A stretch of 64,000 nucleotides of DNA, from positions 124,001 to 188,000 of IMG/VR virus record IMGVR_UViG_3300023184_000024, one strand, 5' to 3'. Below, piece after piece: positions 542-43,620 of this stretch. How positions within the stretch are numbered: position 1 is the stretch's first letter; every line of letters begins with the position of its first letter. Under the pieces are notes generated by a model. That model saw only the letters and a list, made by a program, of their open reading frames with translations, searched no databases and was not told the DNA's origin. The position numbers and the translations under genes are program-made.

Positions 542-633
542 ACCTCGGTAGTTTAACGGTAAAACAGCGGATTTATATCCCGTGCGCAACAGATAATTGG
601 CCAATGTGGGTTCAACTCCCGCCCGAGGTACCA
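542..633 (+). tRNA. tRNA-Ile(TAT) with atypical 22-nt variable arm
   Basis: ACCTCGG/CCGAGGT acceptor, loop TT TAT AT, T arm GTGGG-TTCAACT-CCCGC, A73, CCA. Confidence 0.85.
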
Positions 634-2797: not shown

Positions 2798-2827
2798 TTG
2801 TGTTGTATTTAAACAACACCTATGTGG

Positions 2828-2856
2828 TTGACCAGAAATGCTCATTTTGCTATAAT
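2828..2856 (+). promoter_or_regulatory. sigma70-type promoter P1 of RNA operon
   Basis: TTGACC-17-TATAAT with extended -10 TG. Confidence 0.85.
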
Positions 2857-2925
2857 AGAAACAAGTTAAGAAATTAACTGATGTTGCAAAAGACCCAGGA
2901 AGTTGTAGGGTTTTTGCAAAATGAA

Positions 2926-2954
2926 TTGACCGGTATATGCCATTGTGTTATACT
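2926..2954 (+). promoter_or_regulatory. sigma70-type promoter P2 of RNA operon
   Basis: TTGACC-17-TATACT with extended -10 TG. Confidence 0.8.
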
Positions 2955-2979
2955 AGAGACTAGTTAGAAATTAACTAGA

Positions 2980-2991
2980 TGTTCTTTAAAA
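2980..2991 (+). promoter_or_regulatory. boxA-like antitermination site
   Basis: TGTTCTTTAAAA, right after a hairpin downstream of P2; resembles rrn boxA TGCTCTTTAACA. Confidence 0.7.
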
Positions 2992-3029
2992 AATTATTTT
3001 TCGTATAGTAGTCTCGGACTAGTTCCGGG

Positions 3030-3274
3030 CACTATATGTAAACGCATCGGGTTACCAACCCAGTAGGCAACTTGGCAAGAGACTAATCTGTGGCCGCACA
3101 GACTCTTCCAAGTTACATGAAAGATGGAAACGAAGCCGCAAGGTGGATACTGTACAATCGCGCTGGAACTAGTTGGTCTGTAATGTGTTTGGCAAACAAG
3201 TCCGTGGACGGCACGGTAGGGCAGGTTTAAAACTGCGATCGTTGTCAAACATCCCTATGTGTTTTCATATAGTG
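3030..3274 (+). ncRNA. unidentified structured RNA, about 245 nt (contains copy 2 of the stem element)
   Basis: closing stem CACTATATG-T-AAACGCAT / ATGTGTTT-T-CATATAGTG, with several internal hairpins and GNRA loops. Confidence 0.7.
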
Positions 3275-3280
3275 AATTTT

Positions 3281-3416
3281 TAATGTTGTTAGTTCTGCCT
3301 TCTGTAAGCCCTGGGGGAAACGTCAACCCTGAGTAACTATGTGTATAAACGGTACGTCCGGCCGGCAATTCCGTTGAGCATAGCAAATAGTATAGTTGGC
3401 AGAACTAACAATATTA
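3281..3416 (+). ncRNA. unidentified structured RNA, about 136 nt
   Basis: 19-bp terminal stem 3281-3299/3398-3416, inner CTATG/CATAG and AACGG/CCGTT helices. Confidence 0.6.
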
Positions 3417-3492
3417 GGTCTTAAAGTGTTCATGGACGCACGACGGCTTGTCACGCCGTAAGAGTGGGGATCGTTACCCCCTAAGACCGCCA
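3417..3492 (+). tRNA. tRNA-Asp(GTC)
   Basis: ACGGC-TT GTC AC-GCCGT, G73, CCA; atypical T loop ATCGTTA. Confidence 0.9.
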
Positions 3493-3497
3493 AGTTT

Positions 3498-3569
3498 TGT
3501 GGTAAGGAAAGTAAAAGGAGAATGGGCAAGTTGTTGGCTAGTCAACAACCAGATACCTCACCTGCCACA
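3498..3569 (+). ncRNA. small hairpin RNA candidate
   Basis: TGTGGTA/TGCCACA closing stem, GTTGTTGGC/GTCAACAAC apical stem. Confidence 0.4.
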
Positions 3570-3580
3570 TTTTAATTTTT

Positions 3581-3644
3581 GAGAGCCACATCGCCTGGAT
3601 ACCTCCTCCTCTTAGGAGCACTGGGTCCTGCAACCGTGGCTCTC
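3581..3644 (+). ncRNA. small hairpin RNA candidate with anti-SD-like motif
   Basis: GAGAGCCAC/GTGGCTCTC stem, CTCCT/AGGAG apical stem. Confidence 0.5.
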
Positions 3645-3652
3645 CCTTATTT

Positions 3653-3727
3653 GCTCGATTCGTCTATCGGTTAGGACATGCGGTTTTCATCCGCATAAGA
3701 GCGGTTCGACTCCGCTATCGAGTACCA
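3653..3727 (+). tRNA. tRNA-Glu(TTC)
   Basis: TGCGG-TT TTC AT-CCGCA, CCA. Confidence 0.95.
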
Positions 3728-3732
3728 TACAT

Positions 3733-3817
3733 GGAGATGCCGCCGCAATGGTGTGGCAGGGGACTGTAAATCCTCCGACTTCGGTCACGATAGGTTCGAT
3801 CCCTATCATCTCCACCA
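3733..3817 (+). tRNA. tRNA-Tyr(GTA)
   Basis: GGGGA-CT GTA AA-TCCTC, long variable arm, CCA. Confidence 0.95.
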
Positions 3818-4010
3818 GAACGTTCCGAGTGTCTTCGGATACTGTGACCCGCAGGATGAGAAGTAGTGTGACAACTACGGGTGGTAGTCTTCGAACCTAA
3901 AGGCCGCTGGCAATGCGAGAACTGTCCCTGTCGGGAAGCGGGTGGAAGGTACGTGTGAGGGGTATGATAGCGTCATATCTTTCTGTACTATAATTACCGC
4001 CGGGGGATGC
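3818..4010 (+). ncRNA. unidentified structured, probably pseudoknotted RNA, about 190 nt
   Basis: UUCG-capped hairpin, GTAGT/ACTAC hairpin, 3880-3888/3993-4001 stem, crossing ACCCGC/GCGGGT pairing. Confidence 0.65.
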
Positions 4011-4011
4011 A

Positions 4012-4084
4012 GAGCATATTGAAGCACATTGTGTGTCGGCTTGCTGATAAACTTTAAGTAGAGATAGTGTGTTTCAATATGCTT
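4012..4084 (+). repeat. inverted-repeat stem, copy 3 of AAACACAYT/AGTGTGTTT element
   Basis: GAGCATATTGAAGCACATT pairs with AGTGTGTTTCAATATGCTT. Confidence 0.7.
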
Positions 4085-4089
4085 TTTAT

Positions 4090-4167
4090 GCACAGGTGGC
4101 AGAGTGGTCCAATGCAACGGATTGCAAATCCGTAAAACCGTGAGTTCAAATCTCACCCTGTGTTCCA
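4090..4167 (+). tRNA. tRNA-Cys(GCA)
   Basis: ACGGA-TT GCA AA-TCCGT, U73, CCA. Confidence 0.95.
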
Positions 4168-6451: not shown

Positions 6452-8011
6452 ATGTTTGATAATACTAAACCCAATATTGTAATCTTAACCGACCATACCG
6501 ACCCTTTACTGATGCTCAAGCTGTTTGGTGCCAGTAAAGTTGCCGCAGAATTGCGCATGGCCGGTTTTCAAGTGGCAGTGATTAATCACCTACATCTATT
6601 TACAGTAGAAGAAATTAAAAACATACTAGTACAACTAGTCAGTGATCAAACTGTGTTTGTTGGCACTAGTCCGTTTTTCTATAAAAATATCGAGAATGTG
6701 TTGACTGATCATGAATTTGATCACGAGCAAGGCGGTAAAAAATATGGAACCAAAGAATTAGGCAGTTTTTTGCCACACGGAATCAAGTACAATCAAGAAA
6801 TCAAGCACTTGATCAAAGGAATTAACCCCAACTGTAAGTTTGTCATTGGCGGCCCCGACGCACAAGATCGACAGTACAACAAAGACTACGATTATGTCAT
6901 TGTTGGCTACGGAGACAACAGTGGTCCCAATTTGGCCAGACATTTGGCCTACGGCGAACCTTTGGAAAAATCGCATCGTAGTTTGTACGGACCAGTCATT
7001 GTCGACGATAGATTGGCATCTAATTATAACTTTAATTCGTCGCTGATGAGCTACGAAGATCATGATGCTCTGCTGCCTGGAGAGACCATGCTGACCGAAA
7101 TTGCACGTGGTTGTATTTTCCGCTGTGGCTTTTGCAGTTACCCTCTGAATGGTAAGAAGAAATTAGATCATATTAAATTAGATGACATTCTCTATCAAGA
7201 ATTCATGGACAACTACGAAAAGTACGGTATAACAAGATACATGTTCAGTGATGATACCTACAACGACAGTGTAGATAAAATTAAGATGATGCATGCAGTC
7301 AGTAAACGTTTGCCATTTCAACTTGAATACTGGGCTTGCTTGCGTTTAGATTTACTAGGAGCACACCCCGAAACAATCGATTTGCTGTATGAAAGCGGTC
7401 TTCGTGCCATGATGTTTGGCATCGAAACACTGCATGAAAAAGCCAGTAAGATTATTGGCAAGGGCGGCAGTCGAGCCAAGCAAATTGCCACCATCAATTA
7501 CATCAAAGAAAAGTACGGCAACAATGTAATGATGCACGGGTCCTTTATATTTGGACTTCCTGAAGAGCCAATAGAGTCTATGTTGGACACAGCTGATCGA
7601 TTGGTGTCAGGAGAAATCAAACTTGACTCCTGGGCCATTCATGCATTTAGATTACAACACAAAGGTATGAGTTATACCAGCGAGTTTGATTTGAATCCTG
7701 AAAAGTATGGATACGAACCATACGATAATACATTAGGCGGCAATCGCCTAATTTGGAAAAACAAGTTTACCAACTTTTACGAGTGCGAGAAACTGGCACA
7801 AGAAACACTCAAGCGCGGCGCCATTAAACTAAAACTTAACAAAATTGCCGGTGTAACCAGTATGTTTATTGCAGGGCTGGGTTTTGATTTACAGTACTCG
7901 GCTAATAAAAACGTTGTAGACTTTGACTGGCATCAAATTGATTTGGCCAAACAACGACGCAGTGCAGAATACAAAGAATTGTTGTACAAACAACTCAACA
8001 TTCAACCATAA
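6452..8011 (+). CDS. B12-binding-type radical SAM protein
   Basis: ARGCIFRCGFC (CxxxCxxC), VIGGP, FSDDT, FGIET, FIFGLP motifs. Confidence 0.85.
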   Translation: MFDNTKPNIVILTDHTDPLLMLKLFGASKVAAELRMAGFQVAVINHLHLFTVEEIKNILVQLVSDQTVFVGTSPFFYKNIENVLTDHEFDHEQGGKKYGTKELGSFLPHGIKYNQEIKHLIKGINPNCKFVIGGPDAQDRQYNKDYDYVIVGYGDNSGPNLARHLAYGEPLEKSHRSLYGPVIVDDRLASNYNFNSSLMSYEDHDALLPGETMLTEIARGCIFRCGFCSYPLNGKKKLDHIKLDDILYQEFMDNYEKYGITRYMFSDDTYNDSVDKIKMMHAVSKRLPFQLEYWACLRLDLLGAHPETIDLLYESGLRAMMFGIETLHEKASKIIGKGGSRAKQIATINYIKEKYGNNVMMHGSFIFGLPEEPIESMLDTADRLVSGEIKLDSWAIHAFRLQHKGMSYTSEFDLNPEKYGYEPYDNTLGGNRLIWKNKFTNFYECEKLAQETLKRGAIKLKLNKIAGVTSMFIAGLGFDLQYSANKNVVDFDWHQIDLAKQRRSAEYKELLYKQLNIQP

Positions 8012-12117: not shown

Positions 12118-12756
12118 TTGCCGGTACATTTAATCAATCCACTGCCGATATATCAAGAAGAGTCTGGCTATACTTTGTCAGACTCTGAATTATCGATACT
12201 CAACAATATCAAATATAACTCAGTGAGCAAGCCGTTTATCTGGGAATATGCATCAGAGTATACAATATTAGATCACCCTGGACTGGCAGATCTAAAGGCT
12301 GTATTACAACAGCACTTGGATAGGTATCGCAAAGAAATATGTGGTGTGGTTGATCAAGAGTTTTATATTACCAACAGTTGGTTAAGTAAAATCGAAGCTA
12401 TCCAAGGTAACTTATCTGAACATTCGCACGACAACAGTTTAATCAGTGGTGTGTTTTACATTGATGTCCCGCCCGACACTCCTTTGTGTTTTCGTAATCA
12501 TAGTCAGATTTTTAAAAAACATGATTTTTATTTTTCAAACAGTGTTGATACACAATACCGACAAGAAACATATTGTGTACCAGTAAAATCTGGAGACATT
12601 GTGCTATTCCCAAGTTGGGTAGATCATTACGTTGAAAAAAATCAAACAAGTCATGTTCGAAGAAGTTTGGCATTTGATAGTTTTGTTCGAGGGCTGTTTG
12701 ATGGTAAAATGTTGCACAACGATAAAACTGGTTTTAGTACGCTAATGATTAAATAA
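12118..12756 (+). CDS. putative 2OG-Fe(II) oxygenase (TIGR02466-like)
   Basis: HSH.NS.ISGVFY, GDIVLFPSWVDHYV, RRSLAF motifs. Confidence 0.8.
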   Translation: MPVHLINPLPIYQEESGYTLSDSELSILNNIKYNSVSKPFIWEYASEYTILDHPGLADLKAVLQQHLDRYRKEICGVVDQEFYITNSWLSKIEAIQGNLSEHSHDNSLISGVFYIDVPPDTPLCFRNHSQIFKKHDFYFSNSVDTQYRQETYCVPVKSGDIVLFPSWVDHYVEKNQTSHVRRSLAFDSFVRGLFDGKMLHNDKTGFSTLMIK

Positions 12757-12760
12757 AAGT

Positions 12761-13083
12761 TAAGACTGTATGAAGTAGAGAGAAAAGGATTCAAGACGCG
12801 GGGGCAGTGCCCGCCAGGTCCACCAAAAACACACTGCCAGTCGCGCTGGTTGTATGGTACTATTCTAGAAATAAGGTTCGAATCCTTAGTGTGTTTTTGA
12901 TGGGCCTGACACAGGATCGATTGGGTCAAGAGTATTGAAATGGACAGTCCGGCAATGTAGAAGCCGTTAGGGTTGGGGGAACTCGGCCGAAGACACAAAA
13001 ACCGTAAATGCAAACGACGAACAGTTCGCTTTAGCCGCCTAAACTCGGCTTAGGGTAGGAAATACCTCGTAACAGAAACCACC
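12761..13083 (+). ncRNA. ssrA: two-piece (circularly permuted) tmRNA
   Basis: acceptor piece ends ...GCGGG-GGCAGTG-CCCGC-CAGGTCC-ACCA (12825) before the coding piece starting GGGCCTG (12902); G3:U70; tag ANDEQFALAA* at 13010-13042; 5' end approximate. Confidence 0.92.
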
Positions 13084-13107
13084 AGCCCGCTTCGGCGGGC
13101 TTTTTTT
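13084..13107 (+). terminator. intrinsic terminator
   Basis: AGCCCGC-TTCG-GCGGGCT followed by a T run. Confidence 0.9.
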
Positions 13108-13120
13108 CTTGGAGTAAACT

Positions 13121-13360
13121 ATGGGCAATCAAACCGATTATTTTGAACGCATTGGCTACAAACCCACCTGGTATCTAGGAGATAGGGTGTTTGGGCATTG
13201 GAATAAAATTCCTTTTGTTGGAACAGTGGGCAATGATACTGTGATTAATCATACTGAAGGGCCACGGATCACTATTCATTTAGACCTTCCCATCAAGTAC
13301 AAGAGTCAAATACACAATATTATTGTAGTTAATCATAAAGATATCAAGCTTTACAAGTAA
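13121..13360 (+). CDS. hypothetical protein
   Basis: GGAG RBS, 79-aa ORF. Confidence 0.7.
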   Translation: MGNQTDYFERIGYKPTWYLGDRVFGHWNKIPFVGTVGNDTVINHTEGPRITIHLDLPIKYKSQIHNIIVVNHKDIKLYK

Positions 13361-34412: not shown

Positions 34413-35497
34413 GTTGCATTCCTTGATTGGTAGTCATAGCCTGGCCGCATTTGATCAATTTGTTGTTGTTCGTAATCAGCATCACTCCAACAGTAGTTGT
34501 AAACTGCCTTGGTATCTTTTATTTCTACAGAGTATATATCTAAATGAGTACCGAGTATGTTCCAAATATCTTGATAATTTTCGGTGCCAAAGCTCTGTTT
34601 AAGATTTACTTGTCCCACTGGCAAATGCCCTAGGCTCAATTTGGGATCTTGAGGGTCTAACCCATTATTGCTCAACCATTCCCGAAATGAACCAATTGTT
34701 TTGTCGTGCCAAGGATGCTTGCCGCCCAGAGTAATATCATTGCCCCACTCTATATCAAACTCGCCCGAGTAATATTCTAAATGCGTGATAGCTTCGCACA
34801 CTGTGGCTGTAAGTTCTGGAGCGCCTTCGTCTCTAAACACCTCCATCAGAGTTTTACCAATCTGTGCCCAGTGCATGTACACGCCGCCAAACACACGATC
34901 ATATCCGTTGGAGACAAAGCCTTGGCGATGTTCATCTTCTAGCTTGTATCGAGGAGCATTAATCCAAGTAGTAATCTGACTTGGACGCAACCAGTATGGA
35001 TTTGTTTCTGCTTTGCGTAAACCCAATATTAGATTTTCTGCTTCGTGACAAATTAAATTTAACTGTCGTATAGCATACTTGGTTGCATAGTCAGCTCGTT
35101 GATAATACACACTTAGATTTCCTACTGTGCCTTGCAGTACCTCAAAATGGTTGTGTAGTTTATTAAACAACTCGTGATTTACCCCATTGGGACTATGGTC
35201 TGTGGCAAGCACATTGGTTGTTGTAAATACTTCATCAATTTGATATCCCGATAGGTTGGTATTAATTGTGCTGATATGACGGTTAAGCTCGTTACACAAA
35301 TATTCAATGTCACGGGCAGTCTTAGGAAATCCCATAAAACAAAAGTTTTTTTCTAATAAGTTTCCTGAATTCAATAACTTCTTGAGTGCAACTACCCAGT
35401 CAACTGCCAATTGATGATCCTGCACATCAATGACATAATCTACTGTGTCATTTTTATGCAAAGGGTTGCGTAAAATAATTTTAACCTGGGATTTCAT
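34409..35497 (-). CDS. hypothetical protein
   Basis: 362-aa ORF in operon; some resemblance to 4618..5424 (KLH..FE, LN..CH..E). Confidence 0.75.
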   Translation of the reverse strand: MKSQVKIILRNPLHKNDTVDYVIDVQDHQLAVDWVVALKKLLNSGNLLEKNFCFMGFPKTARDIEYLCNELNRHISTINTNLSGYQIDEVFTTTNVLATDHSPNGVNHELFNKLHNHFEVLQGTVGNLSVYYQRADYATKYAIRQLNLICHEAENLILGLRKAETNPYWLRPSQITTWINAPRYKLEDEHRQGFVSNGYDRVFGGVYMHWAQIGKTLMEVFRDEGAPELTATVCEAITHLEYYSGEFDIEWGNDITLGGKHPWHDKTIGSFREWLSNNGLDPQDPKLSLGHLPVGQVNLKQSFGTENYQDIWNILGTHLDIYSVEIKDTKAVYNYCWSDADYEQQQIDQMRPGYDYQSRNAT

Positions 35498-36776
35498 TCC
35501 ACCACCTTGTTACTTCTTCACGGCCGGACAATATTTGTTGCATGCTGGTTGCACTTGTTCTTATGTTTTCTAATCTCAACACTCGCTGTTTTCCGCGAAC
35601 AAGTGCATCCTGATACCGGTCTGGCCATTGTTCTGCAAAGGTAGGACGATTTTTTAATTGTAGTAGAACATCACGCATGGCACCTGTAGAGCGTCCTGCT
35701 AATTCGTCAACCCAGGGATCTAATAACTCTCGAGGTAGAGCTAATGGGCTCATTACTACATCTGGAGTAAAACTAAAAATCACTTTGGCCAACAATTCTA
35801 CATTGTAGTCACGAGCCAACTCTTGAATAGCATCTACTTCAAACATGCCTGGCAATGTCAGTGTAAAGTCTAATCGCATTTGTCTACGATTCTTCTGGTA
35901 CTTTAATCCTTGCTCAAAGTTGTCACAGAACTGTTTGTAATCAAGTCCTGTTCGGATGTATTCTCCTGTGGTTCCTGTTCCGTCGAGGCTGGCGCAAATT
36001 TGCCAATCTCGAACATTAGATAAAATATCACGATATAGATTACTACCCCGAAAATCAACGCGACTAAGATTGGTGTTATACCTTGCATATACTTGTCCTC
36101 CATCCCCTAATTCAATTATACGTTTCATGTATCTCCAGTGTTGCTCGTACATCAAAGGCTCGCCGCCTACCCAATATACTTCTTCCACTCGATGTTGCTC
36201 TACAGCTAGAGCGAACTCTGCTTCAATTTGTTGGTCCTGAAATTGGCTTATTTCTGCTCGAACTTCAGGCCTCATCCATGTGTTTTTAGGGTTGCCCCAA
36301 TCAATCATGTCATGTTGTCGCTGTTCGCTTTCCCATGCACTACTTAACATATCGCCACATGTGCGACATTTAAAATTGCAAAGATTACTAAAACGATAAT
36401 CCCAACTCACCGGTTTCATTGTTGTGGTGCCATCTTCTGTGGTTGAATCGACTACCTCATCCCACTTGTGTTTAAACAAATGCCAGAAATATGTACGGTA
36501 AACATCAGTATTCAGCAACTTGTTGTTGCAGACGTCACACTCGGGCAATGTATCTCCGTTTAACATGCGTCGACGCACACTTCGCATATGGTCACTGTTC
36601 CAATGCTGATCTAGGGTGATGGGTATATACTTACCAGTGCCCGCTGTTGTGTCAATGTACTGTTGAAAATTCTGGGCGGGTTCTCTGCTGGCGCAACACA
36701 TCCTGCGCTCAGTTTGCGGGCTCAAGTATGTGTGCGTCCAAGGCGCCATGCAAAAATTATTCGGTGGCGAGATCAT
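35481..36776 (-). CDS. twitch-domain radical SAM protein
   Basis: FCMAPW..MCC, CNFKCRTC, GGEP, NTN, SLDG. Confidence 0.9.
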   Translation of the reverse strand: MISPPNNFCMAPWTHTYLSPQTERRMCCASREPAQNFQQYIDTTAGTGKYIPITLDQHWNSDHMRSVRRRMLNGDTLPECDVCNNKLLNTDVYRTYFWHLFKHKWDEVVDSTTEDGTTTMKPVSWDYRFSNLCNFKCRTCGDMLSSAWESEQRQHDMIDWGNPKNTWMRPEVRAEISQFQDQQIEAEFALAVEQHRVEEVYWVGGEPLMYEQHWRYMKRIIELGDGGQVYARYNTNLSRVDFRGSNLYRDILSNVRDWQICASLDGTGTTGEYIRTGLDYKQFCDNFEQGLKYQKNRRQMRLDFTLTLPGMFEVDAIQELARDYNVELLAKVIFSFTPDVVMSPLALPRELLDPWVDELAGRSTGAMRDVLLQLKNRPTFAEQWPDRYQDALVRGKQRVLRLENIRTSATSMQQILSGREEVTRWWNEIPG

Positions 36777-37980
36777 AGTCTAGCAGGGTTGCCAATTCGG
36801 GCGCCACAGTTTTTAAATTTTGAGATCTACGAACATCAAGATGTTTAATTTGGCTTTTGGTCATGAAGCCATCTGTGCTGGCTCCATTGTTCATGAAATC
36901 AATGATTCGATCAAATTCGGTTTGAAATTTTGCAGGAATTTCAGCGTTTTGTAAATGTTGAGTGATGACTTTCTTGGCAGTGTCGGGTAGATTGGCAATA
37001 CTAAAATACCAAGCATCGTGCATCATATTCCAATACACAAAATTAAACGGTTTATGTTCCAACCACTGTGCCACTTGATCAATGTAGCGTACATTAAACA
37101 CATTCACCGTGGTGCATACCTGCAGTTGTATCGTCATGGGCAGGTAACGTTTTAATTCAAAAAACTTTTTAATATTTTCTTGTACTTCTGTCCATACAGC
37201 ATTACTGCGTTGGTATTCAAATCTTTCCCCAATGTCGTCGATGCTGAATGCTATTTCTACTGTTTTAAAATGCTGCCAAATGTCTGGACCTCTTTCAGGG
37301 AATATTGTACCATTGGTGTTGTAGTGTATTTCTACATTGCCTGCAATGCCTCTTTCAACAATGCGTTCCAACATGTCAAAATGCTCTTGTATCATAAACG
37401 GTTCGCCGCCTGTGAATTCAATATACTGTATGTGGTCGAGTACTTGATCAATTTCTGACCAAAATGTTTGGTTTTTTCTGGGCCAGGCACCTTTTCTAAG
37501 CATGATATAATGTTCGCTGGATTTTTTATCTTCGTGTTCAGGAAGACTGTTGATTTCTTCTGAGGCAAACGTGCTTGAACTCCAGGAACCGCAAATGCGA
37601 CATTTTAGATTACAAATATTTCCCAGTTTGAGATCAAGAAATTGCAAAGGTTTTGATTCATCGGTCCATTCTTGATCAGGGATCACATGCTTTAATCGAT
37701 TGATAGTGTGCATTCGTTTACTAGTGCGACCGGCAGCTTCCTCTTTCCAGCACTTGCGACAAGTTTGCGGACGTTCGCCATCTAAGAACTGTTGTCTAAG
37801 TTTTTTCATAGACTGACTGTCTTGTATCTCTACAAAGCTTGCAGTGTTCAAATCAAACTTTTGTCCTTGATCATTGCGAATTTCGTCGTCGGCCAGGCAA
37901 CATGGTCTCACTGTGCCTATTGGACTAGTCTCTAAACTTATCCAGGGCAATACACAGAATTTATCGTGTGGGATATTCAT
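36757..37980 (-). CDS. twitch-domain radical SAM protein
   Basis: FCVLPW..PCC, CNLKCRIC, GGEP, NTNG. Confidence 0.9.
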   Translation of the reverse strand: MNIPHDKFCVLPWISLETSPIGTVRPCCLADDEIRNDQGQKFDLNTASFVEIQDSQSMKKLRQQFLDGERPQTCRKCWKEEAAGRTSKRMHTINRLKHVIPDQEWTDESKPLQFLDLKLGNICNLKCRICGSWSSSTFASEEINSLPEHEDKKSSEHYIMLRKGAWPRKNQTFWSEIDQVLDHIQYIEFTGGEPFMIQEHFDMLERIVERGIAGNVEIHYNTNGTIFPERGPDIWQHFKTVEIAFSIDDIGERFEYQRSNAVWTEVQENIKKFFELKRYLPMTIQLQVCTTVNVFNVRYIDQVAQWLEHKPFNFVYWNMMHDAWYFSIANLPDTAKKVITQHLQNAEIPAKFQTEFDRIIDFMNNGASTDGFMTKSQIKHLDVRRSQNLKTVAPELATLLDYDLATE

Positions 37981-39239
37981 AACAGTGCCTTTAACTCGGG
38001 TATTACATTACTCCAAGACTCATTTCTAATGCTATCTAACTCATGCGTTTTGCGCCAGAACGTGTCGATTAAATGAGTGTTGTCTGTGGTGTTCATGAAA
38101 GTAATAGCACTTTCAAATCCTGTGGTAGCACGGTGCAACGGATCTTGATCACGCAACCATTCCAAATGTTGCTCATATTTTTCTTGTATACGAGCTTTGT
38201 ATTCTGCTGGTGCAATGTCTATTCTATAGTGTGCAGGATCTTGCAAGATGTTTACATTTAAATCCTGTGCTCGAATAAGACCTTGATCAACCCAGGCACG
38301 ATGGAAGTCGGGCAAATGCAACGCATTCATTATGCTTAATGTAGGACTGATATAAAAGTCCACGTTGGGGCAAATGGCCATCATATCTCGACGATTTTGT
38401 TGTACCACAGCCCAGTCTGTACCTTTGCGTATGTACTCTCCACGAACACCCATATCATCTAAACTGGCGCCAACTGCAACAGACTGGAACTGTTTCCAAT
38501 ACTCAAATACACTACGTCCTTTTAAGTCTGTGTGAGTGAAGTTTGTGTTGTATATTAAGCGCACATCAAATCGTCGGCGGCGAACCAATTCATCTAGGAT
38601 ACGATAATGCTCTTCCATTAACAATGGCTCACCACCGGCAAAATAGATTTGTTCTACGTAGTCTAAATGCGGTTCTAGTTGTTGCCACATGTCCGTTTCT
38701 GTGCGGCCGGCATAGTTTAGCACAGTGTTGCGTTCTTTCCAATCGCCACCGGCCAGCTTGGCTTGGTCCTGGTACCATTGACTGCTAAAGATATGACCAC
38801 AGCTACGGCATTTTAAATTACACAAATTGCTGAAACGAATATCCCAATAAGTCATTTCAAAAGGATTGGTCTCTAGCTTTTTAATATGATGTCCGTGGTG
38901 CTTGTTGGCACTACGTCGACCACTAAAGAATCCCGACTCTTCTTGTTCATAACAACGTGTGCAGGCTGCATTGGGTGTTTCACTCAGCATGTCTGTGCGT
39001 AGTCGTTGCATGGGTTTGTCACGCCAGATTTCTTCAAGTGTGTTTGTTCTACAATTGCCCACTACACCGGGTTTCATTTCGGCATGGCAGCAAGGGTATG
39101 CCTCGCCCGTGGGGTAAGCATGTAAATGAATCCAGGGATAGATACAAAATGTTTTTGAGTCTTGTAACAAGAACTGTTCACGCTGTGTTAGTTCTACTGG
39201 TTTCACTAAGTCAGTTGAATTATAGTTATAATCTGCCAT
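37977..39239 (-). CDS. twitch-domain radical SAM protein
   Basis: FCIYPW..PCC, CNLKCRSC, GGEP. Confidence 0.9.
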   Translation of the reverse strand: MADYNYNSTDLVKPVELTQREQFLLQDSKTFCIYPWIHLHAYPTGEAYPCCHAEMKPGVVGNCRTNTLEEIWRDKPMQRLRTDMLSETPNAACTRCYEQEESGFFSGRRSANKHHGHHIKKLETNPFEMTYWDIRFSNLCNLKCRSCGHIFSSQWYQDQAKLAGGDWKERNTVLNYAGRTETDMWQQLEPHLDYVEQIYFAGGEPLLMEEHYRILDELVRRRRFDVRLIYNTNFTHTDLKGRSVFEYWKQFQSVAVGASLDDMGVRGEYIRKGTDWAVVQQNRRDMMAICPNVDFYISPTLSIMNALHLPDFHRAWVDQGLIRAQDLNVNILQDPAHYRIDIAPAEYKARIQEKYEQHLEWLRDQDPLHRATTGFESAITFMNTTDNTHLIDTFWRKTHELDSIRNESWSNVIPELKALL

Positions 39240-40548
39240 ACCACTCTTTTAAATTAGGGAACGTTTCATTAAAATTTTTATATCGTCGAGCATCGTACTG
39301 CAAATGGAACTCTTTAAAATCATGCAACAATGTTGGCATGTCAAATGTTTCACTGTGCGGAGTTTTTACAACGTCCAAGTAATCAATTAATCTTTGTGTG
39401 TGATTTATTTCGTGCTCGTGCAAGTAACTGTGGTCTTTGTGTCGCATTAACCACTCAGTCAGATTCTGTTTGTAATGTTCTCGCAAATCCTCACTCAGTA
39501 CTAAAGCACTCTGAAAGCTGGGAAAACGCAAGATGTTTAATGTAAAATTAAGGTACTCACGACCGTATTGTTTTTTCCAAGCAACTAATTGATCTAAATG
39601 GTCAGACAAGCTGTCCAAGCACAAGGCATTAATGGTGCACATACAATGAACTACTATACCTGCATCCAATAGTTTTAACACATTGTTGCACCAAGCACGG
39701 TAATCCAACCCGTCACGGATGTATTCGGCTTGGCTTCCTGTGGCTTCCATGGAAGTGTAGATTTCAACTTGTAAGCCCTTGGTGCTGGCCAACAGTCGAT
39801 CTACATCTACGTCTGCTCCTAGATTTGAATTAATAGCCAGGCGTGTATTAGTTCGCCCAGGGTTGTTTTTAAACCAATCAATCAGTTTCCAGGTGTAGCC
39901 ACTCATTAGCGGCTCTCCGCCGGTGATTCTTAGTTCTTGTAGTGTTCTGTGGAGGTCTGATTCCCACCATTCAAAGAACGCTTCCACGTACGGATTAGTT
40001 TCACCGAATTTATACAATTGAGCACTATTATGCTCGTGAGTAAAATGGTTACGACCGTCTGACTCCAGTTTAAGGTAAGGTCCGTTCTTTTTAATGTCGT
40101 TGACCCATGTACTACTAAAAGCAGGATTGCAATAACTGCAAGCAAACTGGCAAGTTCTATCAAACGCAATTTCCAAGGTGCGGAGATCAACGTCTTGGTC
40201 AACAGGAGTGTTATATGCTTCATTCAAGGCCTTTATAGGATAAATTTTACTTTTGTACACACGGTCACTGACAGCATTGGTGTCCATGTCTTCAATTTTC
40301 CAGCAGTATTCGCAACCAGGTGGACGTTCGCCAGCTAGCATCTGGCGCCGGTCTTCTTTCTTTTGTGCTGTATTATGTATTGCTTTGGGATTGGTTTTGA
40401 ACTCAGCACCAATGGTGTGTGCAGGAGGATGATGGCAACTGGTTGTTTGTCCTGAACCTAACCATATAGTAGCATTATACCATTTGGCCGCACAAAAGCT
40501 TGAACTTTTAGTGTCTAATATTTGCGTTTTAAAGTCGCGATCGTTCAC
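39226..40548 (-). CDS. twitch-domain radical SAM protein
   Basis: FCAAKW..SCHHP, CEYCW, CQFACSYC, GGEP. Confidence 0.9.
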   Translation of the reverse strand: MNDRDFKTQILDTKSSSFCAAKWYNATIWLGSGQTTSCHHPPAHTIGAEFKTNPKAIHNTAQKKEDRRQMLAGERPPGCEYCWKIEDMDTNAVSDRVYKSKIYPIKALNEAYNTPVDQDVDLRTLEIAFDRTCQFACSYCNPAFSSTWVNDIKKNGPYLKLESDGRNHFTHEHNSAQLYKFGETNPYVEAFFEWWESDLHRTLQELRITGGEPLMSGYTWKLIDWFKNNPGRTNTRLAINSNLGADVDVDRLLASTKGLQVEIYTSMEATGSQAEYIRDGLDYRAWCNNVLKLLDAGIVVHCMCTINALCLDSLSDHLDQLVAWKKQYGREYLNFTLNILRFPSFQSALVLSEDLREHYKQNLTEWLMRHKDHSYLHEHEINHTQRLIDYLDVVKTPHSETFDMPTLLHDFKEFHLQYDARRYKNFNETFPNLKEWYGRL

Positions 40549-41687
40549 TGTGTATTTTCTCTGATGAAATTTAAAAATCGGTTTGGAAAGTTGTCAACCA
40601 AATCTCTGCGATATTCTGCTAGTCGTTGTTGATTATATTTACAAATATCTTGCGAGGCTGCTAGGAAATCAACTAAATCTCCGCGACATAAATCTTCAAC
40701 CACTTCGGCAATTCTTTCGATGCGATCTAAATCATGTTCTATACTGTCAAAACTTTCATCAATTAAATTGCCAAAAGTTTTAAATCCAATTCTATGCATG
40801 TCTCGATAAAACCCTGCATTGGCCACAGCAATCCAGGGATGGGCCATGGCAATAGGTTTCCATATCTTCTCGGTGCGGAAGCTGTAGGGATTATGAAAAA
40901 TAGTTTCAGTTACTAGGCTAAAGTATGTGTCAATGTACGGCTCGGCCTTGAGGTATGCTTCGCCCCATTCGTTGTTGAACAAGCTGTGTTTGACCAAACT
41001 TGTATTGGTGGTATCTAAATTATCAAGCTGATCGCTGTATCTATCAACTTCGTAGTGTTTGGGCAATAGGCGCAGTGGTGATTCTTTAGCCATTAAGTTT
41101 TCCCCGTTGTGCCATAATGGTAGACGAGTTGCACCTGCTGTGCCCAATGTACTAAGACAAGTATACAGACTGTGTTCTAGTAGTCCAGTTGTTCTAAATT
41201 TTTCCAACAACCATTTACGATGCTGACGATGCCGTCCATTTAAAAATAAAAACTTATAGGGCTTATGTGTTTTTTTGTAGATGTCAGTCCATCTCTGAGC
41301 AACAACATCATTGTCATCAAGTTTGAGCAAATTATCAACAAATCCATCGTAGTTGTAATAACAGAATTCTGGGCTCATGTCGCCGCCGGCCAGCAACATT
41401 ATTTTTCTTTCACGTGCCAACTCTGTTATATTATATCGACGCAACTGCCCTATCATTGTGTCGGCACCTTCCCAGGGATTGCTAAAAATAATGTTGGCTT
41501 GGCCAGATTGTGCAACTTCTTCTATTAGTTTGTGGTAATGCTCAAATTGCCAAGGCCCCAACAGATATGTAGCGCCAGGCTCGATATTAATCTTATCAAA
41601 GAACTGGAACTCGCCGTCTAATGCCGAGCCGATAATATCGTAAATTCCGCAGTGGTATCCACTGTACAACTTAACGTTTTTTTGCAT
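40545..41687 (-). CDS. glycosyltransferase-like protein (GT10-like TEK motif)
   Basis: FLFLNGR.R.HR, SLVTET, TEKIWKP, GFKTF..LIDESFD. Confidence 0.55.
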   Translation of the reverse strand: MQKNVKLYSGYHCGIYDIIGSALDGEFQFFDKINIEPGATYLLGPWQFEHYHKLIEEVAQSGQANIIFSNPWEGADTMIGQLRRYNITELARERKIMLLAGGDMSPEFCYYNYDGFVDNLLKLDDNDVVAQRWTDIYKKTHKPYKFLFLNGRHRQHRKWLLEKFRTTGLLEHSLYTCLSTLGTAGATRLPLWHNGENLMAKESPLRLLPKHYEVDRYSDQLDNLDTTNTSLVKHSLFNNEWGEAYLKAEPYIDTYFSLVTETIFHNPYSFRTEKIWKPIAMAHPWIAVANAGFYRDMHRIGFKTFGNLIDESFDSIEHDLDRIERIAEVVEDLCRGDLVDFLAASQDICKYNQQRLAEYRRDLVDNFPNRFLNFIRENTQ

Positions 41688-43620
41688 GGTACTCGCACTC
41701 AGCCCACCAAGACTGCATTTCAGGAAATGCTGTTAAGAAACTAGTCCCTCGTCGACGGTCGTGCTCTGAGAAGAATTGATAAAAGTCTCCTTTGGCTGTG
41801 CTATGATCATCCAATTGCTTTTGCCGCATCCACGAGATGTCTCTTTCTAGTCGTTGCACTTCGTAGTCCTTGAATCCTTGAAATGGCGATAGATTGGATT
41901 CTAGATTGTTGGACATAAAAGTCTTGGAAGATTCTAACACACAGGCATAGCTTTCGGGAAGTATTTGTAAGCTTTGCCAACTGGGTTGTCGTAGTACCGG
42001 TGTATCAAACCACACACGCTGATATGTCTTACTGTGTTTTTTTCTTAGTTCTAAAATTCCGTTAAGCAGTTTCTGGAAACTAGTAACCGATAAATTATTC
42101 ATGGTCACAATGAAAGTCAAACTATTATAACTAGGAACTTGTGTTAGATATTGATCGACCCTGCTCCAAACAAGATCAAAATCCATGCCGTGTCTAATGT
42201 ATTCGGCTTGACTTCCCCAGGCATCCAAACTTACATACTGCATGAAATGTTCAATCTGCCCATTGCAAATTTTCTTAACATAATCTAGGTATCGATCAAA
42301 TAGCCGTTGTTCCACTGAAAAATTAGAAGTCACATTGAGGTGTAATTTAGGATTGGGATTCTCTAACACGTAATCAAACACCTTGTAGGTATTCTTATCC
42401 ATTAGGGGTTCTCCACCAGTCATGCGAAAGTGTTCAAGCTCAGGATATAACTCGGGCCACCATTTCCAGAACGCATCAACATAGGGGTTGTCTTCGCGTA
42501 CCGGTATTGGTTTGTTATGTCCAACAAAATGCTCAGGTGCATTGTGTGGAGTTGACGTCGGATATGCACCGAATCGATCTATTTCGTCTTGCCAACTTGA
42601 GCTAAACTGAGGGCTACAATAACTACATTTAAGATTGCAGGCATGATTAAAATTAACTTCAACATAGCTGGGATTGATATTATCAGTCCACTCTGCACTA
42701 ACAATTTTACCAAAGTCTTTGGCTGCCCAAGGTTCTCCACTACGATAAAATCTATCGCTGAGATTGCCAAGGTCCTCCATGTTCCAGCAATAGCTACACT
42801 CACTGGGACGTTTGCCGTTGAGCATGAGCCTTCGCTGTTCTTTTTTGTGCGTTGTATTGTGCAGGGCACTGGGGCTACGAGTTATATCCTCAATGGGAAT
42901 ACGGTGTAACGGTGGGTGGTAACAACTGTTGTTTAATCCGGTGGGCAGGTGCAGGCTGACCTGTTTCCATTTGGCCAAACACAGGCTGGGACTATACTCA
43001 TCCAATCTCATGCGCATTTTTTCTGCATCATCTAGAAACTTTGATTTGAATCCATCTTCGACTTTTTCTGTTGGCAATTCTGCTAGGCTTTTTGCTTTTA
43101 ATCGATTGAGGTATGTGAGTGTGCGATCAAATATATCACTGCTGGATAATTCTAATTCTTGTTTCATCATTTGCGCAAACTCACCGAGATCTGTGTCAAT
43201 GTCAATTACCAAATCTGCACCTGTGGTATCCAGAGGATATTGTGCATAATAATTTAAATGATAGGAAATGGTGCTTTGAGCATTTTCCATCGGGTCGTCT
43301 AACTGTCTTTTATTTGCTCGTTGTTGACCGGCCAGCACCCATTCGCGTCTAATGCACTTGTCAAGATTCCCATGTATGATTACCACTGGCCGGTCCGGCC
43401 AATGTTGCTTGAGCAATGGTACATTCACACAGTGGGTTAGTATTATTGGTTCTGATTCAAGCCCAATTGTGTCATTGGATAGATATCGAAATTTTGTTTG
43501 ATCGCCTTTATTTTCATAGAATTGTTGATCATAAACAAAATTAGATTTAAAGTCTCGCTGACCTTGTGAATACAAGTAGTAACGGTTGCCTCCTGCACCT
43601 GGATAGTAGCCAATAATCAT
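41671..43620 (-). CDS. twitch-domain radical SAM protein with extra N-terminal domain
   Basis: N-terminal YPGAGGN domain; LCLAKW..SCYHP, CNLKCSYC, GGEP. Confidence 0.88.
   Translation of the reverse strand: MIIGYYPGAGGNRYYLYSQGQRDFKSNFVYDQQFYENKGDQTKFRYLSNDTIGLESEPIILTHCVNVPLLKQHWPDRPVVIIHGNLDKCIRREWVLAGQQRANKRQLDDPMENAQSTISYHLNYYAQYPLDTTGADLVIDIDTDLGEFAQMMKQELELSSSDIFDRTLTYLNRLKAKSLAELPTEKVEDGFKSKFLDDAEKMRMRLDEYSPSLCLAKWKQVSLHLPTGLNNSCYHPPLHRIPIEDITRSPSALHNTTHKKEQRRLMLNGKRPSECSYCWNMEDLGNLSDRFYRSGEPWAAKDFGKIVSAEWTDNINPSYVEVNFNHACNLKCSYCSPQFSSSWQDEIDRFGAYPTSTPHNAPEHFVGHNKPIPVREDNPYVDAFWKWWPELYPELEHFRMTGGEPLMDKNTYKVFDYVLENPNPKLHLNVTSNFSVEQRLFDRYLDYVKKICNGQIEHFMQYVSLDAWGSQAEYIRHGMDFDLVWSRVDQYLTQVPSYNSLTFIVTMNNLSVTSFQKLLNGILELRKKHSKTYQRVWFDTPVLRQPSWQSLQILPESYACVLESSKTFMSNNLESNLSPFQGFKDYEVQRLERDISWMRQKQLDDHSTAKGDFYQFFSEHDRRRGTSFLTAFPEMQSWWAECEYHAKKR

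What the first reader, a model, noticed from the sequence alone, without database searches (positions are those of the whole stretch)
3030..3274. First RNA of the operon: 245 nt, clamped by a processing-type stem, with a T-arm-like module
It occupies the place where 16S rRNA would lie after boxA and is enclosed by a ~20-bp stem of the recurrent family. The 5' domain has nested AACTTGG/CCAAGTT, AAGAG/CTCTT and TCTGTG/CACAGA helices and GAAA/GCAA loops. The 3' domain (TGTTTGGCAA/TTGTCAAACA) holds CCGTG/CACGG and a T-arm-like GCAG-GTTTAAAA-CTGC, so partial tRNA mimicry or decoy function is possible (inference).
Basis: partly seen in the sequence, partly recalled or inferred. Interest (0 to 1): 0.68.

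Follow-up and report, generated by a model that had tools for sequence, protein, structure and literature searches.

The report
New structured RNA of freshwater jumbo phages
The 245-nt stretch is a real member of an apparently undescribed, strongly covarying family of about 200-280-nt structured RNAs that huge freshwater phages transcribe from strong early promoters, usually at the head of their tRNA gene arrays; it is not a tRNA or Y-RNA mimic, and its function is unknown.

Summary
The window is part of a 352,754-bp phage genome with terminal repeats that carries 27 tRNA genes and a tmRNA.

The RNA has about 70 homologues (66 distinct sequences) on IMG/VR and lake-metagenome contigs. None was found in GenBank phages, in representative bacterial genomes, or in the T4 tRNA cluster. 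No Rfam 15 family matches it.

On a sequence-only alignment of 40 members, 87% of cells pair, against 38-44% in slid controls, and 56 of 72 pairs change on both sides.

The architecture is a 22-bp clamp P1, a rod P2a-c ending in a three-way junction (P3, P4), and a side domain P5/P6 with a conserved GACGN pentaloop.

Copies lie either 0-8 nt from a tRNA or directly behind a consensus sigma-70 promoter. In the window the RNA follows tandem promoters, a boxB-like hairpin and a boxA-like TGTTCTTTAAAAA.

The "T-arm-like" hairpin is specific to one subgroup. YrlA, tRNA, Ro60 and RtcB tests are negative.

Metatranscriptome contigs cover the RNA. One joins 3265 back to 3039, two opposed positions inside P1.

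Best reading: an abundant early trans-acting RNA excised at P1. Function unknown.

The parts
2828..2856 (+). Upstream sigma-70-type promoter (TTGACC-17-TATAAT, TG-extended)
   Evidence: Consensus scan, 11 of 12 matches. The same double-promoter leader is 82-88% identical in relatives such as L106, L168, L115 and L165.
2926..2954 (+). Second, proximal sigma-70-type promoter (TTGACC-17-TATACT, TG-extended)
   Evidence: Consensus scan, 10 of 12 matches. Conserved in L079/L106.
2960..2978 (+). boxB-like hairpin CTAGTTA-GAAAT-TAACTAG of the leader
   Evidence: Read from the sequence. Conserved in array-leading relatives. Calling it boxB-like is an inference from the order of elements in rrn leaders.
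2980..2992 (+). boxA-like word TGTTCTTTAAAAA
   Evidence: Exact match to TGYTCTTTAAMAA. From memory, the E. coli rrn boxA is TGCTCTTTAACAA. Relatives carry TGTTCTTTAACAA or ...AAAAA at the same place. The word count in the window alone is not significant.
3013..3029 (+). Small G+C hairpin CUCGG-ACUAGUU-CCGGG directly 5' of the clamp
   Evidence: Read from the sequence. Analogous hairpins sit before P1 in L106, L108, L151 and L154.
3030..3051 (+). P1 clamp, 5' strand
   Evidence: Inverted repeat I4. 21 modelled pairs, 93.8% of cells paired, 18 pairs with changes on both sides.
3052..3064 (+). 5' strands of P2a (UUA), P2b (CCAAC) and P2c (CCAGU)
   Evidence: They pair with 3181-3183, 3172-3176 and 3162-3166. 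P2b is CCUAC/GUAGG in the major type and CCAAC/GUUGG here. P2c is CCGU/RCGG in the major type, CCAG/CUGG here and CCAC/GUGG in G001.
3069..3114 (+). P3 long hairpin with GCCG tetraloop (3093-3096)
   Evidence: Covariation in P3a-c. The loop is GCCG, GACG or GGCA across the family.
3115..3123 (+). Junction strand J3/4, containing the near-invariant AUGAA
   Evidence: Invariant or nearly invariant columns in A4.
3124..3159 (+). P4 region (variable; GNRA-capped hairpin, here with GCAA at 3138-3141)
   Evidence: Alignment A4. The helix covaries. Its length is variable.
3160..3185 (+). Conserved 3' strands of P2c, P2b and P2a, with bulges (GCGCUGGAACUAGUUGGUCUGUAAUG)
   Evidence: The most conserved block of the family...GCGGCGGAG.AUGUAGGCAGUAAUGA....
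3186..3251 (+). P5/P6 side domain: P5 3186-3195/3242-3251; P6 3202-3206/3212-3216 with pentaloop GACGG 3207-3211; subgroup-specific hairpin 3221-3236
   Evidence: P5 and P6 covary strongly. The pentaloop is GACGN in most members and GAUGC in 5. The 3221-3236 hairpin occurs only in the window-type subgroup.
3253..3274 (+). P1 clamp, 3' strand
   Evidence: A metatranscriptome contig joins 3265 back to 3039, the opposed U.U mismatch of P1.

Best explanation
Window 3030-3274 is the gene of a stable, highly structured non-coding RNA. It belongs to a family found so far only in uncultivated, mostly jumbo (200-380 kb) freshwater phages.

Shown:
- The fold: a 22-bp clamp P1 stacked on a bulged rod P2a-b-c, which ends in a three-way junction with hairpins P3 and P4. 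A second domain, P5/P6, branches between P2a and P1 and has a conserved GACGN pentaloop.
- The fold is maintained by compensatory changes in about 66 distinct sequences.
- The gene is always promoter-proximal. It either starts at about +1 of a consensus sigma-70 promoter, or follows an rrn-like leader (tandem promoters, boxB-like hairpin, boxA-like word) at the head of a tRNA array.
- It often abuts a tRNA within 0-8 nt.
- Relatives occur in contigs of RNA libraries, some at high depth.

Inferred:
- Host RNA polymerase makes it early and abundantly.
- It is cut out of the precursor by a double-strand-specific nuclease (host RNase III) acting in the middle of P1, and by RNase P at the adjoining tRNA.
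- That leaves an RNA of about 227 nt whose ends are held in a P1 stub of about 12 pairs, and are possibly joined.
- The conserved core, with its two GNYR-type loops and conserved junction strands, acts in trans as a binding platform or decoy for a host or phage factor during early infection.
- The RNA is about 46% identical between contigs whose flanks are 88-97% identical. This fits a component under diversifying selection or cassette exchange.
For: Family and fold:
- A pattern scan plus the covariance model R1 find about 70 full-length members.
- On a plain MAFFT alignment, 87.1% of cells pair against 38-44% when slid, 56 of 72 pairs change on both sides, and the covariation score is 0.422 against 0.07-0.10.
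- On the model-fitted alignment of 66 distinct rows, 90.6% of cells pair.
- A blind mutual-information ranking recovers the helices.

Not coding: lengths fall in all three mod-3 classes, and the longest open frames are 32-81 aa.

Context:
- ARAGORN distances show the RNA 0-8 nt upstream of tRNA-Asp, Ser, Leu, Glu, Cys, Ala or Lys, or flush behind tRNA-Glu.
- Stand-alone copies begin directly behind TTGACA-17-TATAAT and are followed by another promoter.
- The window has tandem promoters and a boxA-like word.

Expression and ends:
- In the two runs whose contigs lie along the RNA (X15 and X17), they cover about 3020-3283, while 3284-3371 has none in any of the four runs.
- Divergent relatives of the P5/P6 domain reach depths of 3021 and 135.
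- One contig joins 3265 to 3039 with a single T between.
- That junction is absent from DNA collections, whereas the linear 5' end is found in 25 metagenome contigs.

Copy number and variability:
- One copy per complete genome.
- Hypervariability against conserved flanks.
Against: - No experiment exists. The RNA evidence is from assembled contigs only, which cannot rank expression or show true ends, and RNA libraries can contain DNA.
- The back-joint rests on one contig in one run.
- No partner protein was identified. Neighbouring small ORFs have no annotation.
- The phage encodes no RNase III, RtcB or Rnl1. Its one RNA-ligase-family hit is an ATP-dependent DNA ligase.
- No intrinsic terminator follows stand-alone copies, so a cis role on read-through transcription is not excluded.
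- The family was collected mainly with a 5' motif pattern, so conservation of that motif is inflated. G001 shows that it can vary.
Confidence: 0.55

Rival explanations
1. A cis-acting leader element. The structure modifies the transcribing polymerase, as put or EAR-type processive antitermination RNAs do, or it organises processing of the downstream tRNA precursor. It has no life of its own.
For: - It is always promoter-proximal, directly behind a promoter or behind a boxA-like leader.
- No terminator follows it.
- It is often flush with a tRNA 5' end.
Against: - Stand-alone copies are followed within 10-40 nt by a fresh consensus promoter, so the downstream genes do not depend on read-through.
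- In L082, L139, L153 and similar loci it lies between tRNAs rather than at the start.
- At about 220 nt, with two junctions, it is far more elaborate than known antitermination RNAs.
- The downstream tRNA varies (Asp, Ser, Leu, Glu, Cys, Ala, Lys).
- RNA contigs of relatives reach very high depth by themselves.
Confidence: 0.13
2. A circular or end-joined RNA. After both strands of P1 are cut, the ends are ligated by a host ligase or by the RNA itself. The functional form is then a covalently closed, exonuclease-resistant RNA of about 230-290 nt.
For: - Metatranscriptome run X17, contig 17 (321 nt, depth 21.8, 3 differences over 130 nt), lies on 3039-3168.
- The tool lists a joint from 3265 back to 3039 with one T between. 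These two positions face each other as the U.U mismatch in P1.
- The junction word is absent from related IMG/VR contigs and from 241 million metagenome records, while the linear form occurs 25 times.
Against: - It is a single contig in a single run, and the contig could not be inspected.
- Template switching by reverse transcriptase between abundant processed molecules gives the same joint.
- A tandem arrangement exists in DNA (L162, two copies 2 nt apart), although there P1 is full length.
- The phage has no RtcB, no Rnl1 and no Rnl2.
- P1 has no bulge-helix-bulge motif.
- The U.U mismatch is not conserved; many members have a perfect 22-bp P1.
Confidence: 0.12
3. A tRNA-binding RNA. The conserved P6 pentaloop presents an Asp codon (GAC, or GAU in the variant group) to the anticodon of tRNA-Asp, in the manner of a T-box specifier. 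The RNA would sequester, chaperone or sense that tRNA.
For: - GAY is kept in the P6 loop of nearly all of the 66 distinct members (GACGG, GACGU, GACGA, GAUGC).
- tRNA-Asp is by far the commonest immediate downstream neighbour.
- GACGG can pair with U32-C36 of the window's tRNA-Asp loop UUGUCAC (3 Watson-Crick and 2 wobble pairs, by reading).
Against: - The loop is a 5-nt loop closed by a Watson-Crick pair, not a 7-nt specifier-type loop.
- The loop does not change when the neighbour is tRNA-Ser, Leu, Glu, Cys, Ala or Lys.
- Sequence conservation alone fits a protein site equally well.
- There is no T-box or other Rfam match.
- No platform for the tRNA elbow is evident.
Confidence: 0.07
4. One reading: a Y-RNA-like or tRNA-mimicking decoy with a T-arm, working with Ro60/Rsr or RtcB.
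For: - The 5' and 3' ends pair in a long helix, as in Y RNAs.
- In the window subgroup the 3221-3236 hairpin has loops such as GUUCGAAA or GUUCAAAA that resemble a T-loop.
- It lies among tRNA genes.
Against: - There is no YrlA, Y_RNA or tRNA model match at E up to 10 in the window, or up to 5 in 8 homologues.
- ARAGORN is silent at these coordinates.
- The hairpin has 4 bp and an 8-nt loop, and is absent from the majority of the family.
- The complete phage genome has no TROVE/Ro60 and no RtcB.
Confidence: 0.04
5. A chance palindrome, or part of a protein gene (the 84-aa open frame at 2994-3248 on the minus strand).
For: An open frame of 84 aa exists, and gene callers have called similar frames on three other contigs.
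Against: - The frame is not conserved.
- Members differ by indels of every length class.
- The variation is compensatory in helices.
- The strand of the flanking promoters and tRNAs is +.
Confidence: 0.01

Closest known systems
Phage T4 stable RNAs species 1 (rnaC) and species 2 (rnaD) in the T4 tRNA gene cluster
   Same: - Both are non-tRNA stable RNAs of unknown function.
- Both are encoded inside a phage tRNA cluster, directly abutting a tRNA gene, and are released from the tRNA precursor. The T4 annotation is: rnaD starts 2 nt after tRNA-Arg.
- From memory, T4 species 1 RNA is a substrate of RNase III in vitro.
   Different: - No homology: model R2, with filters off, gives nothing above noise on rnaC or rnaD.
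- The T4 RNAs are 139 and 119 nt, and rnaC carries a true T-arm, GGGUUCGAAUCCC.
- This RNA is 200-280 nt, has two junctions and a 22-bp clamp, and lies at the promoter-proximal end.
Bacterial rRNA operon design (tandem P1/P2 promoters, boxB-boxA-boxC antitermination leader, 16S enclosed in an RNase III processing stem, spacer tRNAs)
   Same: Tandem sigma-70 promoters, a hairpin followed by a boxA-like word, then an RNA enclosed by a helix of about 22 bp formed by its flanks, then tRNAs.
   Different: - The enclosed RNA is 245 nt and is not an rRNA. No rRNA model matches.
- The unit is in a phage.
- Many family members lack the leader and start at +1 of their own promoter.
- RNase III cleavage is inferred, not shown.
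Bacterial Y RNAs (YrlA) with Ro60/Rsr
   Same: A terminal helix made by the 5' and 3' ends, a location near tRNA genes in some phages, and, in the window subgroup only, a T-loop-like hairpin.
   Different: - No match to RF02553.
- No conserved tRNA-like domain.
- No Ro60 in the phage.
Orphan large structured RNAs of phages and lake metagenomes (GOLLD, ROOL, and the IMG/VR candidate structured RNAs of Fremin et al. 2023, PMC10690425)
   Same: - Found by comparative genomics in uncultivated or lake phages.
- Often near tRNA genes, rich in covariation, function unknown.
- That catalogue mentions a motif (DNAVirus_1850) found 27 times that touches a tRNA-Asp call once.
   Different: - GOLLD and ROOL are 2-4 times larger and are in Rfam; they do not match.
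- Whether this family is one of the 8,495 IMG/VR candidates could not be checked, because no supplement is held.

Membership tests
YrlA / bacterial Y RNA (RF02553) | Match to the family covariance model | tested here: not met
   There is no YrlA hit at 3030-3274 at E up to 10. There is none on the RNA coordinates of 8 homologues at E up to 5. The only YrlA hit (21.7 bits, cut-off 69) lies on two tRNAs of L166.
YrlA / bacterial Y RNA (RF02553) | Conserved tRNA-like domain with T-arm | tested here: not met
   The 3221-3236 hairpin has a 4-bp stem and an 8-nt loop. It is present only in the window-type subgroup. The majority type has GUAGACAUAGAU instead.
YrlA / bacterial Y RNA (RF02553) | Genomic or functional link to Ro60/Rsr (TROVE domain) | tested here: not met
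   PF05731 is absent from the complete 352,754-bp phage genome, and the control genomes rang. The host is unknown, so a host Ro60 cannot be excluded.
tRNA / tRNA-like (RF00005, ARAGORN) | Cloverleaf detected by the tRNA models | tested here: not met
   ARAGORN finds 27 tRNAs and a tmRNA in the window, but nothing at 3030-3274. RF00005 gives no hit there, even at E up to 10.
rRNA-operon-type processing stem (RNase III substrate) | Helix of about two turns (20 bp or more) formed by the sequences flanking the mature RNA | tested here: met
   The arms are 22 nt. 21 modelled pairs are 93.8-95.5% paired across the family, and 16-18 of them covary.
rRNA-operon-type processing stem (RNase III substrate) | Staggered cleavage of both strands by RNase III | not testable with these tools
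   The only hint is a single RNA contig that joins 3265 to 3039, opposed positions in the middle of P1. The phage has no RNase III of its own.
rrn-type antitermination leader | boxA word (E. coli rrn consensus TGCTCTTTAACAA, from memory) between promoter and first RNA, preceded by a hairpin | tested here: met
   TGTTCTTTAAAAA lies at 2980-2992, 26 nt after the -10 element and after the hairpin at 2960-2978. It is conserved as TGTTCTTTAAMAA in array-leading relatives. Binding of NusB/S10 was not tested.
T4 rnaC / rnaD stable RNAs | Sequence and structure homology | tested here: not met
   Model R2 with filters off gives at most 3.1 bits on T4 70908-71171.
Any Rfam 15 family (4227 models, including group I introns, RNase P, 6S, pRNA, T-box, ribozymes, GOLLD, ROOL, HEARO) | Match at or near the gathering score | tested here: not met
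   The gathering scan of the window gives only tRNAs and tmRNA. The E-value scans give nothing on the + strand of the RNA or on its homologues.

The most novel reading that the evidence does not exclude
A DNA phage of bacteria makes a covalently closed (or end-joined) structured RNA. The 22-bp rrn-like processing stem is cut on both strands at opposed positions (3039/3265), and the ends are ligated. This would resemble the circular pre-rRNA and sRNA intermediates of archaea, but in a bacterial virus that encodes no RtcB, Rnl1 or splicing endonuclease. The circle would then be the abundant early effector.
Probability: 0.15. Interest if true: 0.85.

Novelty: new variant of a known kind. Interest (0 to 1): 0.62.

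Why it matters
Phage tRNA arrays are now read mainly as codon-supply or counter-defence modules. The non-tRNA RNAs inside them, known since T4 species 1 and 2, have never been explained.

This is a large family with very clean covariation and a complex two-junction fold. It has its own strong early promoters or an rrn-like antitermination leader, signs of high expression in lake metatranscriptomes, and cassette-like hypervariability inside conserved flanks.

That makes it a concrete, testable candidate for a new functional RNA class in jumbo phages: an RNP scaffold, a decoy, or possibly a circular RNA. It is also a good target for structure determination. The same operon holds at least two further conserved unknown RNAs, so the locus may be a hub of phage RNA biology.

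Tried and rejected
1. Relatives through the neighbouring S11 peptidase gene (80 loci). Only one locus (L079) has the RNA nearby, so synteny with that gene is not conserved.

2. blastn of the RNA against GenBank phages. No match for either subtype.

3. The 5' motif pattern in 185,579 representative bacterial and archaeal genomes. It gave 62 hits, and none is a family member by model R2.

4. Kissing interaction between the P3 and P6 loops. The loop combinations are mixed (GCCG or GACG with GACGG, GACGU or GACGA). Only the GGCA/GAUGC group correlates, which may be phylogenetic. The mutual-information scan found no pseudoknot.

5. A conserved partner protein. Neighbours of stand-alone copies are small unannotated ORFs at variable distances.

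6. Retrieving the junction contig through gene calls that overlap the RNA. Only three DNA-metagenome contigs came back.

7. The next clamp element (3281-3416) and 3818-4089 as repeated mobile elements. Both are single-copy in the genome.

8. An RNA ligase in the phage. The PF09414 hit is an ATP-dependent DNA ligase. The Rnl1 search found nothing, but its control rang nowhere.

9. The supplement of the IMG/VR structured-RNA catalogue is not held.

10. The first covariance model, R1, was built from 3 sequences with a partly wrong RNAalifold structure. It was used only to collect members.

Full report
**Where the finding lies.** The window is bases 124,001-188,000 of a 352,754-bp IMG/VR virus record with direct terminal repeats, judged 100% complete. 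The first 13 kb of the window hold 27 tRNA genes and a permuted-type tmRNA, all on the + strand. The setting is therefore a jumbo-phage tRNA array, not an rRNA operon. The nearest GenBank phages share only tRNA genes with this stretch.

**The observation.** The repeat finder reports arms 3030-3051 and 3253-3274 (22 nt, 86% complementary) as pair I4. They are also reproduced by the minimum-free-energy fold of -85.3 kcal/mol, z = -3.9, which no shuffle matches.

Upstream lie two sigma-70-like promoters (2828-2856 and 2926-2954). They are followed by a hairpin at 2960-2978 and the word TGTTCTTTAAAAA at 2980-2992. From memory, that word differs at two positions from the E. coli rrn boxA, TGCTCTTTAACAA. 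A second clamp of 26 nt (3281-3306/3391-3416) follows before tRNA-Asp at 3417.

**Relatives.** Searching through the neighbouring peptidase gene gave 80 related phage loci, but only one (L079) had the RNA next to it. A 202-kb complete phage (G005) has a copy exactly filling the gap between tRNA-Glu and tRNA-Cys.

From these three sequences I took the motif AGGTTACCWACMCNGTWRG. It hits 89 stretches in IMG/VR, and nearly all of the 80 loci returned are full-length matches to a first covariance model.

A second model (R2) also finds a divergent copy in a 354-kb phage (G001). Neither BLAST nor the pattern saw it, and it again lies 2 nt upstream of tRNA-Asp. The window and G000 hold one copy. L162 holds two copies in tandem.

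The family was not found elsewhere:
- None of 62 pattern hits in 185,579 representative prokaryote genomes is a member.
- GenBank phages have none by blastn.
- The T4 tRNA cluster, with its stable RNAs rnaC and rnaD, does not match.
- Rfam 15 has no family for it, either for the window or for eight homologues.

**Structure.** I drew a structure by hand on the majority type and projected it on a plain MAFFT alignment of 40 distinct members, A4.

- P1: 22 bp, closed by the 5' and 3' ends.
- P2a: UUA/UAA.
- P2b: CCUAC/GUAGG in the majority type, CCAAC/GUUGG in the window.
- P2c: CCGU/RCGG in the majority type, CCAG/CUGG in the window, CCAC/GUGG in G001.
- A three-way junction with the long hairpin P3 (loop GCCG, GACG or GGCA), the strand AUGAA, the GNRA-capped P4 and an A-rich strand.
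- A second domain between P2a and P1. It consists of P5, which covaries through five or more pair types, and P6, whose pentaloop is GACGN.

On this alignment, which was not fitted to any structure, the counts are as follows:
- 87.1% of cells are standard pairs, against 38-44% with partners slid.
- 56 of 72 pairs have changes on both sides.
- The covariation score is 0.422, against 0.07-0.10.
- No shuffle of 500 reaches any measure.

On the model-fitted alignment of 66 distinct rows the figures are 90.6% and 0.478. A blind mutual-information ranking puts the proposed pairs on top. It adds one pair to P5 and shows no pseudoknot.

The family is not coding. Lengths of 184-280 nt fall equally in the three mod-3 classes, and no frame is kept open.

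**What is and is not conserved.** The near-invariant parts are:
- GGUUACC.AC
- AUGAA
- GCGRCGGA..AUGUAGGCAGUAAUGA
- the P6 loop
- in the majority type, GUAGACAUAGAU and ACAAUGG

The first of these is inflated by the search pattern, as G001 shows.

In the window subgroup its loop reads GUUUAAAA, GUUCAAAA or GUUCGAAA, which does recall a T-loop. The majority of the family has no hairpin there. The tRNA-mimic idea therefore rests on a subgroup-specific module. The formal tests fail: no tRNA or YrlA match, and no Ro60 or RtcB in the complete phage genome.

**Genomic grammar.** Of about 70 copies, most lie 0-8 nt upstream of a same-strand tRNA. That tRNA is most often Asp, but also Ser, Leu, Glu, Cys, Ala or Lys. 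Several copies lie flush behind tRNA-Glu.

About twenty have no tRNA within 3 kb. These begin a few bases behind a consensus TTGACA-17-TATAAT promoter and are followed, without a terminator, by another promoter or by another conserved RNA-like element.

Array-leading copies share the window's leader: promoter, hairpin, boxA-like word and a small G+C hairpin. The RNA is thus always promoter-proximal and driven by host-type early promoters.

Between the window and contigs such as L135, the leader is 88% identical and the element at 3818-4030 is 97% identical, yet the RNA is only 46% identical. It behaves as a hypervariable or exchangeable cassette.

**Expression.** The stretch occurs in lake and freshwater metagenomes of 18 studies and in six RNA libraries. 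Four metatranscriptomes were laid on 2800-4100, as assembled contigs only.

- In X15 and X17, contigs lie along about 3020-3283. In X20 and X16 they lie only on the P5/P6 part.
- There are none on 3284-3371 in any of the four runs.
- Upstream of about 3020, X17 has none, and the other three runs have scattered contigs at low to moderate depth.
- One 315-nt contig spans 2939-3222.
- Contigs of depth 3021 (X20) and 135 (X16) match only the P5/P6 domain, with unlike upstream sequence. These are divergent, abundant relatives.

These data show presence in RNA libraries. They do not show levels or ends, and DNA carry-over cannot be excluded.

**The back-joint.** In run X17, a 321-nt contig (depth 21.8, 3 differences) lies on 3039-3168. 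The tool lists a joint from 3265 back to 3039 with a single T between (table 5c). By the sequence, U3039 and U3265 are the opposed mismatch in the middle of P1, 9 pairs from its open end and 12 pairs from the core.

The junction word is not found in related IMG/VR contigs, nor in the metagenome collection. The linear 5' end is found in 25 metagenome contigs.

The joint therefore seems to arise at the RNA level. It could be circularisation, or reverse-transcriptase template switching between processed molecules. Either reading would place the mature ends inside P1, as expected for a double-strand-specific cut.

It is one contig, and I could not inspect it. The mismatch is not conserved. The phage has no RNase III, RtcB or Rnl1, and its ligase-family gene is a DNA ligase. 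I treat it as a lead.

**Interpretation.**
- Shown: a real, conserved, non-coding, elaborately folded RNA family of uncultivated freshwater (mostly jumbo) phages, with its own early promoters or an rrn-like leader, and present in RNA libraries.
- Inferred: excision at P1 by host RNase III and by RNase P at the neighbouring tRNA, and a trans-acting role of the conserved core as a binding platform or decoy in early infection. The hypervariability fits an arms-race component.
Each is weighed in its own section.
- Function: it remains unknown. My commitment is to the stable, processed, trans-acting RNA.

**Comparison and novelty.** In kind it is closest to the T4 species 1 and 2 RNAs: orphan stable RNAs co-transcribed with phage tRNAs. 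In layout it is closest to bacterial rRNA operons. It is homologous to neither.

It may be among the thousands of unnamed IMG/VR candidate motifs of PMC10690425, which I could not check.

I rate it a new variant of a known kind, with interest 0.62. If the circular form is real, it would be a new kind.

Noticed in passing
window 3818-4089 (core about 3837-4030): A non-tRNA element between tRNA-Tyr and tRNA-Cys. It has by far the highest depth in four metatranscriptomes (up to 11,182 in X20) and many variant contigs. It is conserved at 93-97% in the best-matching of the 32 family loci that hold it. It gives only weak but recurrent tmRNA_permuted hits (19-23 bits, model 36-95). Bases 3882-3899 are complementary to the T-arm of the adjacent tRNA-Tyr (3791-3808). 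A homologue follows the RNA in L147.
   Followed up: partly
window 3281-3416: A second element closed by a 26-nt inverted repeat, between the RNA and tRNA-Asp. It is single-copy in the genome. Homologues of about 80% identity occur in only 5 other family loci. It is absent where the RNA abuts tRNA-Asp (L093, L079). No metatranscriptome contig lies on 3284-3371.
   Followed up: partly
window 3493-3652: A 160-nt spacer between tRNA-Asp and tRNA-Glu, matched in 32 related loci (86-96% over its full length in the closest ones). It is probably a further conserved RNA of the operon.
   Followed up: no
window 12733-13133: A phage-encoded tmRNA with tag peptide ANDEQFALAA. It scores 111 bits on the permuted-tmRNA model and 84 bits on the betaproteobacterial model, which may hint at the host.
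   Followed up: no
L162 77-300 and 303-531 (minus strand): Two divergent copies of the RNA family in tandem, 2 nt apart, upstream of tRNA-Asp. This is the only duplicated case seen.
   Followed up: no
L109, L112 and L103, directly downstream of their copies of the RNA: A further shared motif, CCACGCNNAGTTCGCAACTNNG..., follows the RNA. It is possibly another conserved structured RNA of these phages.
   Followed up: no
window 3003-3038: The leader word GUAUAGU (3003-3009) repeats the 3' end of P1 (UAUAGU, 3268-3273) and can pair with the start of P1 (ACUAUAU, 3031-3037) across the small G+C hairpin. The same word stands in the leaders of L108, L151 and L154. It may be an alternative, co-transcriptional pairing.
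   Followed up: no
window 6452-8011, 35481-43620 and 51068-63865: A B12-binding radical-SAM gene lies inside the tRNA array. A run of radical-SAM-like genes and a Nol-like carbamoyltransferase lie on the minus strand. There is also a giant open frame of 4,265 aa.
   Followed up: no
window 542-633: ARAGORN calls a 92-nt tRNA-Ile (anticodon UAU), which is unusually long for that identity. Rfam tRNA scores it at 54 bits.
   Followed up: no
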